Translations under genes and position numbers: made by a program | Part shown: positions 23,901 through 40,400 of the stretch, one piece after another | Layout of the letters: each line of letters opens with the position of its first letter | How positions within the stretch are numbered: the first letter of the stretch is position 1 | Notes under the pieces: generated by a model | Seen by the model: only the letters and a program-made list of their open reading frames with translations | What the model was told of the DNA's origin: nothing | Databases searched by the model: none | From: Magallana gigas | Taxonomy: Eukaryota | NCBI RefSeq assembly: GCF_963853765.1 | Contig: NC_088854.1 | Span: 8,556,001 to 8,620,000 of the forward strand | Direction of reading: 5' to 3' | DNA: 64,000 nt

Positions 23901-25684
23901 GCAAAGTGTCATGCAGTATATATATATATAAAAATATGCCATACTATTAAAGTAGAAATGACACGTTAATCGTCGTATTTGAATTAATAAATGCCACAAC
24001 GCCTGCTTTGATGTTTTTGATAATAAAATAAAATAAAATGTTCCAAATAAAGACACAAAAAACAGGATCATACAGTTATTTCTCAAAAAAAGTATTTAGC
24101 TTATATTGGATATTAATTGCACTTTTGCGTTAGTATAAAACCGAATTATTCACACTTTCATACCATGGATATGGCACTAATGGAGTCGATACTTGTTATT
24201 TCAAGCTGAACATCAACCTCCGTTGCCACATCTACAAACAATATAATAACATCCTTGTTACATGATTGTACATATCAACCAATTAAAATTGGTTCTATAT
24301 CGCAATTTAAAGGTTTTATCAAATGTTGATATAGGGCCTTCTTTGACTAAAACACACCAATATATATAGCTACCTTTTTCGTAGTCAGGTGCAATTCCAG
24401 CGTCATATGTTGAGCTGTTCAGTAGATGATTCAAAATATCCCTTCTGAAATGTACCACAGTAATATTAAATGTTTTTGTATACAGCTTTATTATTGATAT
24501 GGGACTCTAAACCTGCTTATCAAACAAATGTTTAATATATTATATCTTAAGCGTTGTTGAATAAAATGCAGCAGTGAACTCAGCCCTAAAGGTCTTCGCG
24601 ACACATGGCAATTCTAGGACAGGTCAAGGTTGACCCAGTTGTATTGTTAAATATGTATATGTAACAGTTCTACTAACGTGTAGATTCTCAACTAAGAGTA
24701 ATATATGTTAGGAGAGATATTATAAAGAGTTAGTTGAAAATGGGTTTGGGGCACCATATAGATGTAATTTTTTTGTCAACAACACAATTTAATTTGTCAC
24801 AAATAGGACACATATCAATAATAAATCAGGAGGTGAATGATTTCAAATAAATAGTCAATGCACTTTAGTTACAATCAATCATTAATCAATTAGCAATGTT
24901 TATTTGATATCGTAAAACCAGGATACGAAATTGACAATTTTGGAAAGCTAGGGGAGTAACAATGTAAGCCACGTCAGAAATATCAAGCTTGTTGCGTGTA
25001 TTGCTGCGACAGAATAGTTGACCTTGGTCATAAAAAAAGATTTGTCCCGCATAGTTAAGTTGATGTAAACTTGCAGAATTTTAGTTTGTATTCTTGGTTA
25101 TGAAACCTTGAGAAACCAAATCAACGTTGACTTTATGATAAAACAAAAAAAATAAGACTACTTACATCGATTTCATTAAGCACAGGATGAGTGTCCTCCA
25201 TGCGATGCGAGAATACAAGATATATAAAGCAGAAAGTACTACAAGAAGTTCGTCTGATGCTTGTACTCTTTCATCATTTCATGTACGTAATAAATGAAAC
25301 GTTTACATAATTTATAAAAAAAAAAGATTCGAGATATGTTGTAAGGCGCATTTATAATCCATTCATTTTATTTTGCTTTATACGTGTAAAGAAAGGTTAA
25401 CATAAATCATATTCCTTTCATCTTTATTAAAAAAATGAAAATTGGTGTAATTTTTTCTGATAAAATCGTTTTTAACTGAGGTCGCATACAACAACCCATA
25501 CATTTATACAAAGACATAACGCTATCCTTTTATTACTTTAGATTCATTGTTATCTATATCATGCATCAGGGGGAAAAGACTTTATAAAAGCTGGAATCAA
25601 GTAATCATACCTCTGCAGCTGCTGGGACCTGACCAGGCGACCCAGCAAAAGAACAATCCACAGACTGGTGAAGAGAGTGTTCAT
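17920..25684 (-). CDS. Cys-loop ligand-gated chloride channel subunit B, 390 aa; exons 25684-25611, 24444-24374, 24231-24164, 23649-23423, 21764-21682, 20155-20006, 18830-18493, 18081-17920
   Basis: Exons of 74,71,68,227,83,150,338,162 nt (1173 nt) join in frame with canonical splice sites and the same phases as gene A. Signal peptide [20 protein letters not shown], Cys-loop [16 protein letters not shown]2 [20 protein letters not shown]4 [27 protein letters not shown]. Confidence 0.93.
22447..23326 (+). mobile_element. Helentron-associated non-autonomous element (HINE-like) with ~165-bp satellite-like array
   Basis: 5' aaacaaaaggcccataggccacatcgctcacctg. About 4 degenerate internal units, a (gacg)n microsatellite, and a 3' ggtgatcagaaaagctca...caggtgagct end forming the subterminal IR gctcacctg/caggtgagc. 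The site is empty in gene C (~38165). Confidence 0.8.
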
Positions 25685-31488: not shown

Positions 31489-34400
31489 TTATTTTGAAAG
31501 ATAAACAACCCAAAAAACAAGATTGAAGACAGCATAGCAGATAGGGAAGACAACTCTGGACAATCTATCAACACGTCGAGCTCGGTCCATGAAATCTGTC
31601 TTCGTTTGGGGTTCCATGATCTGCATGCTCTTCTTATCTTTCTCATTGTCCTATAATTATTCAGTAATCAAATAATCACTCAATGGACAAACAAAAATCC
31701 ATTTTTTTTTAAACATGTGTTTTGACTTTTCCCGGATTTCTTTGCTATGTTTTTCATTTTTCAAAGTTTACAGTAAACGTATCGAACATTTCACTATGAA
31801 TTCATCTCAGCATTAATTGAGGTAACCAAAAACAAATAAATTGCTAAATGTCCTTCATAAACTTTATAAATTTATGCAATTACATTCATAAATCTGTTAA
31901 TTGTGTACTTGTTGAAAAGTCAATTTTTGCCAAATATTGTATACGTTTGAAATACGTCTAGCGTAACATTGTGTTGTAAGTTATTATTATATTAATTCAT
32001 TTTAATTAGAGGACATTACCTTTGTTTGTTTTCGATGTTTTCGTGTTTGTACGTTTATATAAGCATATTCAAGTAAAGCGGCAAACACAAACAAAAGTCC
32101 AACAGCCATCCAAATATCGATGGCCTTAATATAAGACACAACCGGAAGAGAGGACCGTATACCGGAACTCTGCGTTGTCATGGTGAGCACACAAATGACT
32201 CCGAGCGAAACTCTTGCGGGAACAGCATCCACGTGAATCCAAAACGAGATCCAGGAAAGGATGACAATCATCATGCTTGGAATAAACACTTGTGACATGT
32301 AGAATCCCAAATTTCTTTGAAAAAACAGTTTGGCTTCGAGACAGGAAAACTCCGTATCTGAAATTGGTACATAAGAATTTCTTGATTTCATGTGATTAAG
32401 AAAGAGCAATATTGCCCCTCTTTCCTAGGAATAAATGAAAAGTGAAAGTTTAAAACATCGACGACTCCGGATTATGCTGTACGTCTTTTATCATTTGAAT
32501 AACCTGTATATATAAAATGTTTATACATGTTATATTTAATGCATTCAACCAACTTCACTTTCTTGTAAAGTTTTGAAATTTATCCAGAGCTGCGTTTCAC
32601 AAAAGAACTTGCGACCTACGACCAATTTAATGAATGTATTTAAATAACAAACTAATTAAGATTTGAATTTAAAGAGGGCAAAATATAATTATAGAAAACA
32701 AAATTAAGGTTAATTGATGATGCGCAAACCAAATGTCATGATTACTAAATATGACCCTCATATTAAGGGTATGAAAAAACGCATTCTTAAACACTGGAAG
32801 CTTCTGCAAAAAGACCCAATCTGCAAAGAAATTTTTAACATTGAACCAATAGTCGCCTGCAGTAAACACAAAAACATAAGCGAATTAATAACTCACTCTC
32901 GATTACAATAATGTGTGACCTATAAGGTGGACCCCTGATGAGGCGGACCAAAAGAGCAAAAACTCTATATTCTCTTTAAAACCCGCCGAAACACTCCACA
33001 CTTCCATAATAGCTTATTTAATAAAAACCCATTAAGTGGTCAGAGTGTCGGGTCCTTTTAAAATTTAAACAAACTTGGTTGATTGATGTACTTTTTTCAA
33101 ACTAAATTTTGTTCGTCAAAGATGATGCATTCTACAAGACGGAAAATATTTACGACTTTGTCGTTAGTTCTTTCCCAGATCTTTGTATTTGAGAAAATGA
33201 ATATGTCATTCAATCCATGGGTCTTAAAGCAGACTTAAAATCCCTCCAAGAAGAAGCAGGGAATAAAATCAAACGTAGCATTTAAGTAGAACAATTCATG
33301 AATGTTTACATTTGGTCAAAGCTAGTTTCATTAATGTGTTGACATACCGAAATGTTACCTTATTTTTAAAATAAAAACAACAATTGTGAACTAACCAGAC
33401 AGATTTGGCAATAGATGCAATTGCTATAATTAACTAATTTAAAAACAAACAACATCTAATGATTTTGTTAACTGAAAAATTAACACGATTGCAGCAATCT
33501 GTTCCGATTTAATTTCTATGAAGCTGTACGTTTTGACAATGATAAGATATTGTTAGTATCTAATTGAGTTGACAAACTCAACAGGAATTTGAATAATTGT
33601 GATTGCAAATTGGGAATAATGACATCAACGGCAACCAAAAAGGGAGTCTCTGACTTATATGTCAGATTGGTGGAGGGGGCGGCTGCAAAAGCTACAAAAT
33701 TAATTATCCTTTTTCTACTAGAAATCCTTTTTTGTTGTCTTTAACCCAAATAGTTAAGAAACGTGACAAGTTCTATATTCATTATGAACTTTGGCAAATT
33801 ATTAACTAATGTAAAATTGTTATCTTAGTTAAATGCATCACTAATTGTTCTGTAGAATGGTCACCATTAACATACCCCTGTGTACTATCAGGAAAACGAG
33901 AATCGATTCTATATCTTTATTGTGCTTCTTGTCTTCAAACAACAATTTTTTTGATATTGTTATATATTTTATATATAGTCATATTATATTCTAAAATAAA
34001 AAAATCCTCAGATTATTTTGTCAAATGTGTTTGTTAAGATAAACAAATCAGTAAAGTGGGTTGACTTGGTGGTTTTCTGATCGATCAAATGATTTCAGTA
34101 AAGGGTGTGCACCTGAAAACACCTTAAATATTGTGTCATTCCGTTTCATGTTTATGGTAAAAGACCATCGTAACCTAAGAAACACGTGATAGAGTGACAG
34201 AGACGTAAAAATAGAATCTCACTAAAAGAGTTGACTGTAGAGCAGCCCTTGGTTTCCAAAGGTTTGTAGAAATAGAACTGCGGTAGGGTTTGTTCGTCGT
34301 TATCGTCAAGCCCAAAGATAACCGGGTCATCGGGATTCCACTTCAAAGCAACATTTTCTATAGAGTAACCATCTGCAAGACAAAAACCAGTAAATCATAA

Positions 34401-37400
34401 TTTCCTTGATTTATTTTTGTTCTCAGTCTACATTATGACGTCATGTTTCATACGTAAAACGTAAAAGTTGTGTCTTTGGAAACAACCGAAAAGGTACGTA
34501 ATTACGATTTTTTGTTCTTCTTTCAATTCTTATCTATTTCATAAGTTGATAAATTTTCTATTTATACTTTATTCAGTATCTAAATAAATGGTTCCGTAAT
34601 GTGATTTTTAAAATTTTCTATCTAATGATTTGACAAGATATTTACTAATTTAAATATCACTTCTGCTAAACTAAGAAACTAACGATTGTTACAACTCATG
34701 CATACATGTAGTGCTCGCAGTGCATTTTTCATAAAACACAAATAAAACCTTACTTTCATTTAAATACTTAAAAATAAATCATTTTTACAAATAATACATT
34801 AAAATTTATAAACCTTCTAAATTCAGAAACATTTAAATATATAAATGTGTACATGTTTCTACTTGGATTTTCTGTGCTGTTTAAACGTTTAAAACGAAAC
34901 AAAAAATCTATAGAAATCTGCTTAGATTAAATGGGTTTGTATTTTGTCGAAGTGGAACAATTTTCCTTTGTTAACATGTGTTACCTTACTTAAAAAAATT
35001 AGAAGCACAAGGTAATTGGAGAACATCGTAATTTTTTGATTTAGAATGTTTAATTTCTGGTAGAGCATACTTTTTGTTCATCATTTTCTTGCAAACAAAT
35101 TAAGCTAATGAGCTTCTGGGTCAAATGACACAGATTTCAAGATTTAAAAAAAAAGTCATATTGTATTAAAACCCCAAACAATTATCAACAATCAGTTTCC
35201 CTGCAATCTTGTCCAACAGCATTTTGTAATTGGTAAAACCATCAGGTTTTGATCTGTAAGCTTTAAGTTGAAGGCCGTTAGGTTTTGCTCATCCGAACCT
35301 AATTGTCGATTGTCTGTCTGTCTGTTTGTTTGTCTGCCCGTCCATCTGTCCATCAGTAAACTTTTTACATGTTTTACTTCTTCTCTAGAACAACTGAGCC
35401 AAATTTAACAAAAATTGGTATAAAGCATCTTTATGATAATGGAATTTAACGTTGTAAAATTAAATATTCTTTCTCTTTTCAAAGATAGCCGAAAAAATAA
35501 CCAAAACAGTAGAAAAAGATGTTTTTCGTAAAAAAAAAATCTTTTCGAGAACCACTGCATCACAAATTCCAACGTATATAACAAAGCTTATATAGATAGT
35601 GACAATACTAAATTGCTAAAACTATGCATATGACCCCCAGATCAATAATGAGGCCTTCAGAGATAGCAAAAGTTCAACATATAAATACACAGGAAAAATG
35701 TTTTAAAATCTGTTCAAGAACTACAGTGCTACAATTTGTGATTCTACTATGCAAGCATCTTCAATCAGTTTAGATTCGGACCATTTCCGGGACCTGAAGA
35801 GGGGTTCAGAGTCTAATATCAAACTTAATAAATAGCCTAAAGGGGCATGGTCACCATTTGGGTCAAAAAATGTTATCCGATTAAAATTTTTATGATGTAT
35901 CAGTAAGGCATTTTTAATAGGCAATTGAATGTTGAAGTAAAAATTCCAGTTTGAGACCTTAAATATGTTGAACGTCAAGAACCGTTTATTTAGTTAAACA
36001 TATGAAAACAAAAACAAAGCACGGGCATTGTGTACATGACAAAGAGTTGAGAACCCTTTATCTTGTAAATAACTCTAACTCCCAAATTTCATTTGATCAT
36101 TAGAAATGCATCCCAAAAGCATGGTATGTAATAAAAACAGAAAGAAAAAATAGAATTTTATCAAAATCGTAACCACGTCCCTATTTACTATATATTCATT
36201 TTTTGTCTAATGTTTGTAGACAGCTCGAACCATAACGATAATATTCCACTTCAATTATCAAACTTATCTTAGCAAGGCAGAGAAACACAATGTTGCATCG
36301 TTGTTTGCTTTTTTTGTTGCTTTTAATACTTACAGCTTTCCATAAAAATAGAACAGGTCTGGTCGTCCATTGGAAAAAATCGTAGATCCATTATACAAGA
36401 CAGAGTTAATGATAATCTGTAAATAAGAATCATCATTAAGTTGAATTATTAATAGTTTATTATATATTTAGTTCTCTAGATTTAGATACACTAGTCAAAA
36501 TTTCTAACGCCCCATGCAAGTGTTTATTTTACACAGTTCCTAATTCAAATCATTTGACCATGACGATAGTTAAATATCAAACATAGAGAATAACAAAGCA
36601 TTTTTTAAAAAACTCAATCAAAATTTATTTTAGTGTTTTTGAAAGAATGAAGAAGGCACAGTACCCTCCAATATAAAAATTATTACTTTAAAACCACGTG
36701 ATTTTCCCATTTTCATTGATAACAGCATCTCATAGAGACCCCACAATTGATTAAAAACCCTTTGTGGAAGGTTATTCCATCTGTTTATGTGGTCTAGTTT
36801 TGCAAAATTCGAATGCCGAGGAACGGTCTTTGAGGTTTCTCATCCCACCCAAACAGGCCATTTATGTGTTATAAAAGATAGCGTGCTGTTGAGCGTTTTG
36901 TGCGGTGTTTATCTGAAATTGAGTTACCCAAATGTAGCCGTCATGTTGACGTGCCGTTACATGACGTTTATGCCATCATGGTAGGTCTTCAACATTTCCG
37001 GTTGCATTGGATTTCCGGTCAAACCGTTAAATGATTGTGTGATGTCTTTAACGATTTGTGATGAAAATCAGGAATTAAGAATATCTTATTGTTTGGACCA
37101 TAGTTTTAAAAGGTTAAAAATTAAAGTCAAGAAATCAAATATTGTGAAAAGAAAGAAACCTATCGTAAACCGCGCTCTGCTTGGATCACGTTCGCCGATT
37201 TTAACTGAATTGAATTTATGTTTTTTAAAGTAATCGATCGAATTGAGTCGTTTTGAAAAACACATTCGAAAAACATATCGAACACGCCCTCCACGCCTTT
37301 CAACAAATACGGTCATGGTTGAGTTATTTTAACTCGATTACAAATTTTTGACATGAACAGGTAATCATTTAGAAACAGTCGATAGTGGCAACAACTTAAA

Positions 37401-40400
37401 AACTGGTGTTAACGTTTTTAAAATAATAAATATATACAACTAGGATGTTAGGAATTTTGACCAGTATATTATTGTTTGCATTTACGATATTTTTTTAAAG
37501 CAATCATGTTGTTCATAAAAGAGATATAAATAGTTCAAATAGTCTTGTCTTAAAAGGTTGGTTGGTATAACCAAGCTTCACCACCGAATAGTTATACAAT
37601 GATTATGTAATATCATCCTGGAACATATAAAACTATGAGCGTCGCTTGATATACGAAAGAGAGAAAACTATTGATTATACTCTTTTGAATTGCACTATCA
37701 AAGATCCGAATTATCACAACTTTTGTTTCAATTATTAAAGTTTACGAGGTATATTGGAGTGTATTCTGAAAGTAGGTAAAAGTTCTGCAACAATGTTTTG
37801 GCTTTTATGTGTCTGACCTAGCCTGAACTGCAGGCTCTGGGATTTAGAATTGGCAGAAACAGAGAAAAATGTGAGAATCATCGCGCCTAACACACAACTC
37901 TTCAGAGAAACATCCAAGGCTAGACTTGGCACTTGTATAGAATTCTAACACTTACAATGGAATTATACTTGGTAGTAACTGTCTCACTTTAACTTCTCTC
38001 TAGAAATGGTGCATGTAATAATGCTTCTTCAAAGCGTGAGATGCAGAGACACATTATATTGTATTGTTTATAAGCTTATCTTAACGTTCTCTAAAAATTC
38101 TAATGCTATTCATCGTGTTGTAAATTTGCTTTATAGTAAATGCATCTATAGAATTGATAGAAATTTAAGACACAATAATTAACGAAAATAATGGGAGCGG
38201 TTGGGGGGGGGGGGGAGAGGATTATGCTCTTGGTTCTTGTTGAATTCAAGAACGGCCTACACAGAGGTCATACACAGAGACATGTCCGACCTGATGCTGT
38301 AGATAACGAAACCGTCGTTGTAGATGTGGAAAAGTTTGTTTGGGACTGTGACGGTGTGGACGCTGGCACTCTTCTCATTCTGGAAGTAGGTGTCTGGGAC
38401 CCACACGTCATCGATACGTCTCTGATCCAGTTCTAGGACACTGATGTTGCTGATATGAGAGAAGTTGAGGCGAGAGTCTCTCCATGTCTGTCGCAAAAAA
38501 ACGTTCATTGAGTAATCCTGTAACAAAATGGTGTAGGTTGAGGAATCAGACGGATGAATTGTGACGTTGATTCCTTATCATTTCTTCAATCACACTATTT
38601 AGTGTATTATCTTTATGTGACTCAAAAAGTTGTTAAAATATCAGTTTTTACATGTATAGACTAATACTTTTTTATAAGCGATAATTGTATTGCTTATATA
38701 AAAGAATTAATTTTTTGAACGTTTTAAATCGAGCATCTATAGCCTTGAACAACCTTACAACTTCAAGTAAACTGCATACCATTTTACCAATGTCTGAAAT
38801 CGAACCATGGTCAATTTTGGCATACCAATGGTAAGTTATTAGATCTAACAGTTTAAGAATTACATTTTCAATGTATGATTCTTAGAATGTGGCAATCGCA
38901 TATTCATGATCTCTAGTGCTATTTTGATAACATTTGACTAAATACAATATTATATGCCTTTTATTATTTTTGCCTGAACCATGTAAAATACCCGATGGAT
39001 CTACTTATACAACAGTTTCTGATATTAAAATTTTCGGGTTATGTTAGGATGGAGAGCATATTCTTAATTTTAATGAGCATGGTTTTCCTTTTACAATTCT
39101 GGACAATCATTAGCGTCTATTAAAACGAGTAACCCGATACCATTCTACTATTGTCGTTGTAAAGCTTACACCAATTGATAAACAGTCATTGCAATGATAT
39201 ATGAAATTCATGTTCTTTTATCAAGACTGGAAATGACACGGCAGTAGCGTTTATGAATTTACAATTGCCCCAACACCTAACTGATATAATCTTTCAAACA
39301 AAGACACGAAAGAGCATCTTTCAACGACTACTTAAGGGCGCATTGAGCGTATTTAAGATAATAATTGCAAATTTTTGTAGGTATATAACGGAATTATTTA
39401 AATTTTCATACCATGGATATAGCATTAATGGAGTCGATACTTGTAACAAAAAGCTGGACATCAACTTCTGTAGCAACATCTACGAATTACAAAATATATC
39501 CTTGTTACATGATTGTCTATTTCAAGTAAAAAAAATACCACATCTATTTCACAATTTACGGTGTTATCAAATGTTTGATAACCTTTGACTAGCACACCAT
39601 TGAATATAGCTACCTTTTTCGTAGTCAGGTGCAATTCGAGCGTCATACGCTGAGCTGTTCAGCAGATAATTCAAAATATCCCTTCTGAAATACATACAAT
39701 TATATGAAATGTTTCAATACAGCTTTATTATTGATATGGGCGTACAAACTTGAATTCAAAAAATTATTAAATATATTTGATTATAAGAGTTGTTAAATAA
39801 AATACAGCACCGAACGTAATTTTAAAGTTCTTTGTACATATTCTAGTATTTAACAAAACCATTTTGATCAACCTTGACCTAACCATGAAGTGGCTAGTTC
39901 ATGTAACAGTTTTACTTAATTGTAGATAGTATCTGAACCAAGAACAGTATATGTTTGTATAGGTTGTAATAAAGCCAAGAATCAGTCTGTTCAAAAATGG
40001 CTTTGGGGCACCATAATTGATAGATTGGGGTTTAAAATAATTCAAAATAGTCGATATACTTTAGTTACAATTAATTCATTGATTAATTAGTAATTCCTGT
40101 CTGATATTCATCACCAGGGTCTTGAAATTAATAATGTTGGCAAGCTAAGATTAACGACAACAAAGAATAACATGGTAAGTGACGACATAAAATATTTAGC
40201 AAATAAAGCTTGTTGCGTGTATATCAGCAGTGATAAAATAGTTGACCTTGGCCAAAAAGGGAATTTTGAAACGCACAGAGACTTGCTAGGGATTAAACGA
40301 GTTTTAATATGTTGATAAAAACTTGTAAAATTTAACTTTCAGCTCTTGCTGATGAAACTACGAAAAATAATATCTACATTGACGTTATGACAAAACAAAC

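What the first reader, a model, noticed from the sequence alone, without database searches (positions are those of the whole stretch)
32929..33055. Complete, monomer-type hammerhead ribozyme hidden in an intron
Seen: every core nucleotide (CUGAUGA, GAAA, GUC) and three Watson-Crick stems are present. Stem I has 6 bp, stem II 5 bp with a ~36-nt loop holding a small agag/ctct hairpin, and stem III 6 bp extended by cactt/aagtg. It starts about 18 nt after the stop codon of a Penelope-like ORF. Established: PLEs carry type I hammerheads, often minimal ones with a very short stem III that need dimerisation. Inference: the long stems II and III here should let it self-cleave as a monomer after C33049. 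It lies antisense to channel gene C, so it would not cut that pre-mRNA, as expected if sense-oriented intronic insertions are purged.
Basis: partly seen in the sequence, partly recalled or inferred. Interest (0 to 1): 0.75.

Follow-up and report, generated by a model that had tools for sequence, protein, structure and literature searches.

The report
Hammerhead ribozyme in truncated Penelope-like retroelement
A complete hammerhead self-cutting RNA motif really is there, but it is the leftover 3' end of an endonuclease-less Penelope-like jumping element that landed backwards in an intron of an oyster ion-channel gene: a good new example of a known association.

Summary
Window 32929-33055 (+) has every hammerhead core nucleotide, three helices (6, 5 and 6 bp) and C17 at 33049. 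That fold is the minimum-energy structure and 29-50% of the ensemble in 127-727 nt contexts.

It is not chance. A covariance model finds at least 149 copies in this roughly 564-Mb oyster-like genome. Across diverged lineages and metagenome relatives, 14 of 19 pairs show compensatory changes while the core stays fixed.

The window copy is a 382-bp, 5'-truncated fragment (32722-33103) holding the last ~63 codons of the RT gene, the hammerhead and a 48-nt tail. Its parent is a ~3.6-kb element that forms tandem arrays, with ORF1 and a Penelope-type RT but no GIY-YIG endonuclease. Endonuclease-bearing relatives carry minimal hammerheads; this clade carries a full one with a long helix III.

The motif lies antisense in an intron of a Cys-loop channel gene.

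Self-cleavage was not shown: Rfam models miss it, and the RNA reads were too few. The purging argument is untested.

Other agents of this scan already noted the same family elsewhere in this genome. Verdict: a real, probably cleavage-competent relic, and a new member of a known kind.

The parts
32722..33103 (+). 5'-truncated copy (subfamily A) of an endonuclease-less Penelope-like retroelement
   Evidence: Homology to other copies starts at 32722 and ends at 33101-33107. Copies L002, L004 and L005 continue further upstream, so 32722 is a truncation point and not a unit boundary. The copy is 88-90% identical to its nearest copies.
32723..32911 (+). C-terminal remnant of the ORF2 (RT) gene, with stop TAA at 32909-32911
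   Evidence: tblastn gives 69% identity to residues 582-645 of the intact 650-aa ORF2 of subfamily B.
32929..33055 (+). Type I hammerhead ribozyme motif (127 nt)
   Evidence: for sequence and fold. It scores 116.8 bits, E 1e-33, against family model R1.
32935..32941 (+). Core C3-A9 (CUGAUGA)
   Evidence: Invariant except the free position N7 across 11 lineages.
32942..32987 (+). Helix II: 5 bp (32942-46 with 32983-87) closing a 36-nt insertion that holds an inner hairpin
   Evidence: G10.1-C11.1 is invariant and four of the five pairs covary. The insertion varies from 4 to 126 nt between lineages.
32988..32990 (+). Core G12 A13 A14
   Evidence: invariant.
32991..33048 (+). Helix III: 6 bp (32991-96 with 33043-48) plus a 5-bp extension (32999-33003 with 33034-38). 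A15.1 is 32991 and U16.1 is 33048.
   Evidence: -7.9 kcal/mol when folded alone. All lineages of this clade have 6-10 bp here.
33049..33049 (+). C17, with the predicted cleavage 3' of it
   Evidence: Position follows from the core geometry. H17 is C or A in relatives, never G. Cleavage itself was not shown.
33056..33103 (+). Conserved 3' tail of the element, ending in ...TTTTTTCAAAC
   Evidence: The tail is conserved across lineages A-G. All copies end here. The end motif is stuttered three times in L009.
32696..32719 (+). Tail-like 24-nt segment just upstream of the truncation point, resembling 33067-33088
   Evidence: Local alignment score 27 against a background of 14.4 +/- 3.0; 3 of 2967 random window pieces score as high. 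It may be the PLE 'tail' signature or microhomology.
34155..34394 (-). Upstream exon-like frame of the host Cys-loop channel gene (ligand-binding domain)
32005..32424 (-). Downstream exon-like frame of the host gene (TM1-TM3)
   Evidence: A frame containing TM4 lies at 31492-31650.

Best explanation
The motif is the element's own hammerhead, carried in a dead 5'-truncated copy of an endonuclease-less, two-ORF Penelope-like retroelement. The copy inserted antisense into an intron of a Cys-loop channel gene.

Shown for the live element:
- The hammerhead sits between the RT stop codon and a conserved ~50-nt 3' tail.
- Units of about 3.6 kb lie head to tail.

Inferred:
- On a read-through or multimeric transcript, the ribozyme folds on its own, because helix III is 6 bp or longer and not palindromic.
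- It cuts after C17 and releases unit-length RNAs with 5'-OH and 2',3'-cyclic phosphate ends.
- Every truncated DNA copy spans the cut site and runs 48-54 nt beyond it. The reverse-transcribed template must therefore be uncut RNA or re-ligated (circular) RNA, with reverse transcription starting at the tail end.

The window copy still has an intact core and all its pairs, so it would probably cut any plus-strand transcript. Nothing suggests it serves the host.
For: - Sequence and fold. The hammerhead fold is the minimum-energy structure and 29-50% of the ensemble in four contexts.
- Family: 34 BLAST copies and at least 149 model hits genome-wide.
- Covariation: 14 of 19 pairs change on both sides, 93.8% of cells are paired against 45% or less when the register is slid, and 0 of 500 shuffles reach the observed values. 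A descriptor-based table made independently of the model agrees.
- Linkage: the hammerhead follows the ORF2 stop in lineages at 47-100% protein identity in this genome. It also does so in metagenome relatives at 39-47%.
- Element anatomy.
- PLE affinity: ORF2 is 33% identical over 635 aa to same-genome ORFs with RVT_1 plus GIY-YIG.
- Clade: the full-hammerhead, endonuclease-less elements form one clade, SH-aLRT 99.
- Transcription: three RNA-seq runs hold 67-79% of the element's words.
- Antisense intronic position.
- Decay: sister copies of subfamily A carry core and stem hits, e.g. CUGAUAA, GUU and broken pairs, as expected for neutral relics.
Against: - No cleavage was observed. No read starts or ends fall at the predicted cut of the sister lineage, and contigs bridge it.
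- No Rfam hammerhead model matches.
- No loop-loop tertiary contact between helices I and II was identified, so activity at physiological Mg2+ could be low.
- Helix II is only 3 bp in two lineages.
- DNA carry-over in the RNA libraries cannot be excluded.
- Circularisation and rolling-circle reverse transcription are inference; tandem arrays could instead arise by unequal crossing-over.
Confidence: 0.8

Rival explanations
1. The motif is structurally intact but catalytically poor or inactive. It would be a 'pseudo-hammerhead' that needs protein or RNA cofactors, or pairing with a second copy, like the minimal PLE hammerheads.
For: - No conserved helix I / helix II tertiary contact was identified.
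- Metazoan PLE hammerheads cleave poorly in vitro (PMC4209133).
- In the Anolis PLE, cleavage is dispensable for insertion in vitro and no RNA-seq ends map to the cut (PMC11167929).
- My reads showed no ends at the cut.
- Genomic copies all span the cut site.
Against: - Helix III is 6-10 bp and not palindromic in every lineage of the clade, so no dimer is needed.
- The core is invariant and 14 of 19 pairs covary, which implies selection on the folded RNA.
- EN-deficient fungal PLE hammerheads with a large helix III cleave as monomers at 1 mM Mg2+ (PMC4209133).
- Two earlier notes of this scan report read ends at the cut in sister lineages; I did not verify them.
Confidence: 0.2
2. It is a unit of a non-autonomous, non-LTR retrozyme (a small circRNA retroelement) rather than a truncated autonomous element.
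For: - The 382-bp size resembles mussel retrozyme repeats of 350-390 bp (PMC7229834).
- Some model hits lie 148-330 nt apart, e.g. C1:63292286 and C1:63292614, which could be short tandem derivatives.
Against: - The fragment is colinear with the 3' end of the autonomous unit and includes 63 codons of ORF2.
- It is a single copy, not a tandem repeat.
- Sister copies L002, L004 and L005 extend further upstream into decayed ORF2.
Confidence: 0.04
3. The copy has been co-opted by the host, for example to process an antisense transcript that regulates the channel gene.
For: The core and all pairs are intact although the copies differ from each other by about 10-12%.
Against: - With about 47 constrained positions and about 5% change per copy, survival by chance is roughly 1 in 10, which is not remarkable among several copies.
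- Sister copies decay freely.
- No expression or orthology evidence was obtained for this locus.
Confidence: 0.04
4. It is a chance match to the hammerhead consensus.
For: Rfam models do not score it. The fold z-score is a modest -2.6.
Against: At least 149 related copies, conserved linkage to the RT gene, and covariation in all three helices.
Confidence: 0.01

Closest known systems
Hammerheads of endonuclease-deficient PLEs of fungi and protists (Coprina-type), Cervera and De la Pena 2014 (PMC4209133)
   Same: Type I topology, a large stable helix III, helices I and II of varied size with no recognisable tertiary contacts, location in the terminal repeat region, and an RT without GIY-YIG.
   Different: - The host here is an animal (a bivalve).
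- The element sits inside chromosomes and introns, not at telomeres.
- No reverse-complement telomeric repeats lie next to the ribozyme.
- It forms multi-unit tandem arrays.
Minimal hammerheads of metazoan EN+ PLEs (Penelope/Poseidon, Neptune, Nematis)
   Same: Same core, type I topology, and position in the pseudo-LTR or 3' region of a PLE. Examples in this very genome (L073) and in metagenome relatives.
   Different: - Those have helix III of 0-2 bp, often palindromic, and are thought to act as dimers.
- The clade studied here has 6-10 bp plus extensions, and a helix II insertion of up to 126 nt.
Athena/Terminon EN- PLEs of rotifers and EN- families arising inside Neptune (PMC8557442)
   Same: - Loss of the endonuclease, an ORF1 with coiled-coil character, and a hammerhead near the 3' end.
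- The nearest EN+ relative here has a CX4CxxC linker of the Neptune/Nematis kind.
   Different: No telomeric association or telomere-complement repeats were seen. Clade assignment against named references was not done.
Non-LTR retrozymes of invertebrates, e.g. mussel (PMC7229834; bioRxiv 10.64898/2026.07.22.740005)
   Same: Type I hammerhead, tandem head-to-tail units, and a proposed circRNA intermediate. Retrozymes are argued to derive from PLE pseudo-LTRs.
   Different: Retrozymes are 170-400 nt and non-coding. This family's unit is 3.6 kb and encodes its own RT, and the window copy is a single truncated fragment.

Membership tests
Hammerhead ribozyme | Conserved core: C3 U4 G5 A6 N7 G8 A9, G12 A13 A14, the A15.1-U16.1 pair, and H17 that is not G | tested here: met
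   All present at 32935-41, 32988-91, 33048 and 33049. Invariant in 11 lineages except the free N7 and H17 = C or A.
Hammerhead ribozyme | Three helices around the core with G10.1-C11.1, supported by covariation | tested here: met
   Helices of 6, 5 and 6 bp. 14 of 19 pairs have double changes and 0 of 500 shuffles reach that (on an alignment fitted to the model). The descriptor table agrees.
Hammerhead ribozyme | Site-specific self-cleavage 3' of H17, giving 2',3'-cyclic phosphate and 5'-OH ends | tested here: inconclusive
   Only 52 raw RNA reads were laid on the sister lineage. None begins or ends at the cut, and contigs bridge the site. A bench assay is needed.
Hammerhead ribozyme | Tertiary contact between helix I and helix II elements, as in fast natural hammerheads | tested here: inconclusive
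   The flanks AAGGU (5') and UAAUAAAU (3') are semi-conserved, but no recognised contact motif was identified.
Hammerhead ribozyme | Match to curated Rfam hammerhead covariance models | tested here: not met
   No hit at gathering score or at E up to 10. Compact relatives and minimal PLE hammerheads also give no hit. The likely cause is the long insertions; this is an annotation aid and not a defining property.
Penelope-like elements | RT related to PLE RTs | tested here: met
   - ORF2 is 33% identical over 635 aa (E 2e-86) to same-genome ORFs that carry RVT_1 (39.7 bits) followed by GIY-YIG (37.6 bits).
- Homologues are precomputed as RVT_1.
- ORF2 itself is below the Pfam threshold.
- Placement among named clades was not tested.
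Penelope-like elements | GIY-YIG endonuclease fused to the RT (defines EN+ PLEs only) | tested here: not met
   ORF2 stops where relatives continue into the Zn-finger linker and GIY-YIG. The 3623-bp unit has no room for another ORF. EN- PLE clades are recognised (PMC8557442), so this puts the element in the EN- class and not outside the PLEs.
Penelope-like elements | Partial or full head-to-tail tandems (pseudo-LTRs), adjacent inverted truncated copies, and frequent 5' truncation | tested here: met
   Arrays with 3623-3636-bp spacing on C7, C3, C1 and C6, an inverted copy at C7:14282993, and truncated copies of 100-390 bp.
Penelope-like elements | Hammerhead motif in the terminal repeat or 3' region | tested here: met
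Non-LTR retrozyme | Short (170-400 nt) non-coding tandem repeats, each with a type I hammerhead, expressed as circRNA | tested here: not met
   The window has a single copy. The fragment contains RT coding sequence colinear with the autonomous unit. circRNA was not tested.

The most novel reading that the evidence does not exclude
This bivalve clade may be an autonomous counterpart of retrozymes. An endonuclease-less PLE would use a monomeric hammerhead to cut multimeric transcripts into 3.6-kb units. Those units would be ligated into coding circRNAs and copied by rolling-circle reverse transcription from the conserved tail. This would explain three things at once: the exact-unit tandem arrays, the fact that every truncated copy spans the cut site, and how the element spreads inside chromosomes without its own nuclease. 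Loss of the endonuclease paired with a full hammerhead would then be a functional link that recurs across kingdoms (Coprina in fungi and protists, this clade in animals).
Probability: 0.15. Interest if true: 0.7.

Novelty: new member of a known kind. Interest (0 to 1): 0.35.

Why it matters
The link between hammerheads and Penelope-like elements has been known since 2014. This copy therefore adds an example, not a principle.

Three points give it some value:
- It documents an animal PLE clade that lacks the endonuclease and sits inside chromosomes. Its ribozyme is the full, stable-helix-III type so far described for telomeric EN- PLEs of fungi and protists, whereas the EN+ relatives sampled here, where a motif was found, carry minimal hammerheads.
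- Rfam-based annotation misses the whole family, so such ribozymes are under-counted in mollusc genomes.
- Truncated copies all span the cut site. That constrains models of what the ribozyme does in PLE replication: the template is either uncut or re-ligated RNA.

For the channel gene the insertion is most likely neutral.

Tried and rejected
- **Rfam:** nothing on the window at gathering score, on 32850-33150 at E up to 10, or on seven related loci at E up to 1.
- **Pfam and PDB:** Pfam on ORF2, ORF1 and the window stub gave nothing useful. A sequence search of ORF2 against PDB chains gave no hit.
- **The look-up of encoding contigs:** Metagenome contigs were used instead.
- **The fetch from genomes:** As a result, about 20 more diverged lineages, the closely spaced model hits and full-length 5' junctions were not examined.
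- **Reads:** Only 52 raw reads were laid, with no ends at the cut. The 'goes back 3601' joint with 22 letters between is just the rest of the 3623-bp unit, so it does not separate a tandem array from a circle.
- **32722 as a unit boundary:** I first read 32722 as the boundary of a 386-bp non-autonomous element. I rejected this when sister copies proved to continue upstream.
- **Constrained fold:** my first attempt used coordinates off by one; corrected.
- **L093:** its motif has G at position 17 and a broken stem I, so it was left out.
- **Tree:** rows with stops or short HSPs (L058, L075, L004 and others) and duplicates were left out. No named reference RTs were available, so no clade name is claimed.
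- **Paper PMC5850863** (Terminons) is not held.
Full report
**1. The observation**

- Stem I: 32929-34 pairs with 33050-55, 6 bp.
- Core CUGAUGA: 32935-41.
- Stem II: 32942-46 pairs with 32983-87, 5 bp, closing a 36-nt loop that holds an inner hairpin.
- GAAA: 32988-91.
- Stem III: 32991-96 pairs with 33043-48, 6 bp, extended by CACUU 32999-33003 pairing with AAGUG 33034-38.
- C17: 33049.

The upstream frame ends at TAA 32909-11, 17 nt before the motif.

RNAfold gives exactly this three-way junction as the minimum-energy structure (-29.7 kcal/mol, z = -2.6). With the three helices enforced and the core kept unpaired, the hammerhead fold holds 29-50% of the ensemble in contexts of 127, 247, 382 and 727 nt, and it is the minimum-energy fold in each.

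Rfam 15 does not see it, neither at gathering score on the whole window nor at E up to 10 on 301 nt.

**2. It belongs to a family**

BLAST of 32900-33080 against the window's own genome (564 Mb, 29 contigs) gave 34 matches. These fall into a close subfamily A (80-92% identical, including the window copy) and a subfamily B (about 73%). Subfamily B occurs in arrays spaced 3623-3625 bp apart.

An alignment shows the core kept in both subfamilies, while individual old copies carry inactivating hits such as CUGAUAA, CUCAUGA and GUU.

A covariance model built from eight lineages of this genome (A1/R1) finds at least 149 hits genome-wide. Only 150 candidates were scored, so this is a lower bound. The window copy scores 116.8 bits. 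It is the only hit in the window.

**3. What the element is**

One subfamily B unit (L031) is 3623 bp. In order it holds:
- ORF1, 235 aa, coiled-coil-like with a basic tail.
- ORF2, about 650 aa.
- The 133-nt hammerhead, directly after or overlapping the ORF2 stop.
- A 48-nt tail beyond stem I, ending ...TTTTTTCAAAAC. The next unit then follows with no spacer.

ORF2 has no GIY-YIG domain. Pfam is silent on ORF2 itself. However, its homologues (about 645 aa, widespread in oysters, pearl oysters, mussels and scallops) are precomputed as RVT_1.

In the same genome ORF2 aligns at 33% identity over 635 aa (E 2e-86) with ORFs that continue for 151 more residues through a CX4CxxC linker. Those ORFs score RVT_1 at 39.7 bits and GIY-YIG at 37.6 bits, which is the canonical EN+ PLE architecture.

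Arrays, an adjacent inverted truncated copy, and many 5'-truncated copies complete the PLE picture. EN- families arising inside EN+ clades such as Neptune are on record (PMC8557442).

**4. The window copy**

Homology runs only from 32722 to about 33103. It covers the last ~63 codons of ORF2 (69% identical to subfamily B), the hammerhead and the tail.

Sister subfamily A copies continue upstream into a decayed, frameshifted ORF2. So 32722 is a 5' truncation and not the edge of a small unit. Copies differ by 10-12%, so the insertion is not young.

A 24-nt stretch just upstream (32696-32719) resembles the tail at 33067-88; 3 of 2967 background pieces score as high. This could be the PLE 'tail' signature (PMC8557442, PMC11167929) or microhomology.

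**5. Covariation**

Eight lineages of this genome, at 47-100% ORF2 identity, carry the motif right after the ORF2 stop.

A protein-based scan of metagenome contigs returned 80 loci. The closest relatives are L077, L078 and L079, at 39-47% identity. Their ORFs also end without an endonuclease, and they also have a full three-helix hammerhead downstream.

A descriptor-based table over 11 lineages shows:
- The core, G10.1-C11.1, A15.1-U16.1 and the 15.2-16.2 pair are invariant.
- Double changes occur in helix I (five positions), helix II (four) and helix III (three to five).
- Helix III is always 6-10 bp.
- The helix II insertion ranges from 4 to 126 nt.

On the model-fitted alignment A3, 14 of 19 pairs change on both sides and 93.8% of cells pair. 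Slid registers reach 45% at most, and 0 of 500 shuffles reach the observed values. That alignment leans towards the model's structure. The plain MAFFT alignment of this genome's lineages alone gave a weaker but positive signal: 4 pairs, 33 of 500 shuffles.

**6. Ribozyme type and endonuclease**

EN+ relatives, at 27-31% identity, carry minimal hammerheads with helix III of 0-2 bp, often palindromic. This holds in this genome (L073) and in the metagenome loci where a motif was found. These are as described for metazoan PLEs (PMC4209133).

In a quick maximum-likelihood tree of 75 RT segments, the full-hammerhead, EN-less elements form one clade (SH-aLRT 99), apart from all rows with GIY-YIG. The tree is midpoint-drawn and has no named references. 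Rows with stops or short alignments were left out.

The same pairing, an EN-less RT with a large-helix-III monomeric hammerhead, was reported for fungal and protist PLEs. One of those cleaves at 1 mM Mg2+ (PMC4209133).

**7. Function**

Shown:
- The ribozyme lies between the ORF2 stop and a conserved tail.
- All truncated DNA copies, down to about 100 bp, span the cut site and end 48-54 nt beyond it.
- In L009 the terminal motif TTTTCAAAAC is stuttered three times and is followed by a second 102-nt terminal fragment.

Inferred:
- Reverse transcription starts at the tail end. This matches the internal or tail-linked initiation shown for an Anolis PLE (PMC11167929).
- The template is either uncut RNA or cut-and-religated circular RNA.
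- The ribozyme's likely job is to cut read-through or multimeric transcripts into units, as proposed for PLEs in general (PMC4209133).

RNA evidence: three RNA-seq runs hold 67-79% of the subfamily B unit's words, and their contigs cover it. The one raw-read run gave only 52 reads, with no pile-up of ends at L031:3851/3852, and contigs bridge the site. Cleavage in vivo is therefore untested here. The 'goes back' joint equals the tandem unit and is uninformative.

**8. Host context**

Minus-strand exon-like frames of a Cys-loop ligand-gated channel lie at 38260-38574, 36326-36445 (the Cys-loop), 34155-34394, 32005-32424 (TM1-3) and 31492-31650 (TM4).

It cannot cut the channel pre-mRNA.

A 2026 preprint reports exclusion of vertebrate retrozymes from introns and exons, but gives no orientation test for this family (10.64898/2026.07.22.740005).

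**9. Earlier notes of this scan**

Earlier notes describe the same EN-less PLE family and its hammerhead on other pieces of this genome. Two of them state that RNA reads end at the predicted cut. I treat these as leads. My own reads call neither confirmed nor contradicted them.

**10. Verdict**

This is a real, family-conserved, structurally intact type I hammerhead in a dead fragment of an EN-less Penelope-like element. It is ordinary for the host gene. It is a new member of a known association, with a moderately interesting clade-level pattern: a full hammerhead goes with loss of the endonuclease.

Noticed in passing
window 32696-32719: A 24-nt segment immediately upstream of the 5' truncation point resembles the element's own 3' tail (33067-33088). 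Only 3 of 2967 background pieces score as high. It may be a PLE 'tail' signature or microhomology at insertion.
   Followed up: partly
L009, minus strand, about 1340-1480: After a subfamily B copy the terminal motif TTTTCAAAAC is repeated three times, followed by a second 102-nt 3'-terminal fragment. This looks like repeated initiation or template jumping at the element's 3' end.
   Followed up: partly
G000 C1:63292286-63292751; C2:440309-440574; C3:52330610-52331730: Model R1 hits lie only 148-530 nt apart, some in inverted orientation. They could be short non-autonomous (retrozyme-like) derivatives or the head-to-head junctions typical of PLEs.
   Followed up: no
L031:3724-3726 compared with window 32909-32911: There are two ORF2 stop variants. 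In eight subfamily B copies an AAT-to-AAA change removes the TAA stop, and the frame runs 8 codons further to a TAG whose last two bases are the first two of stem I.
   Followed up: partly
L079:2476-2684: The compact 84-nt hammerhead of this metagenome relative is followed by a long 8-nt microsatellite of the form (GAAANNGC)n. This fits the microsatellite insertion bias reported for PLEs.
   Followed up: no
L066, about 2560-2650: Downstream of an H-lineage copy lies a tRNA-like stretch in reverse orientation, seen in the printout. It may be a tRNA gene or a tRNA-derived SINE at the insertion site.
   Followed up: no
window 24261-24506 (-) and 39570-39713 (-): Two exon-like frames share a near-identical N-terminal motif ([26 protein letters not shown]). 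This indicates tandem paralogous Cys-loop channel genes in the window.
   Followed up: no
L073 and L129: Rfam 15 gives no hit at E up to 1 even on the canonical minimal PLE hammerheads in these loci. PLE-type hammerheads as a class are invisible to Rfam-based annotation.
   Followed up: partly
L080:about 3020-3060: The sister lineage to the full-hammerhead clade (35% identity, ORF extended by 75 aa with no GIY-YIG detected) carries a small hammerhead with a palindromic helix III (ACAGCUGU), which is the dimer type.
   Followed up: no
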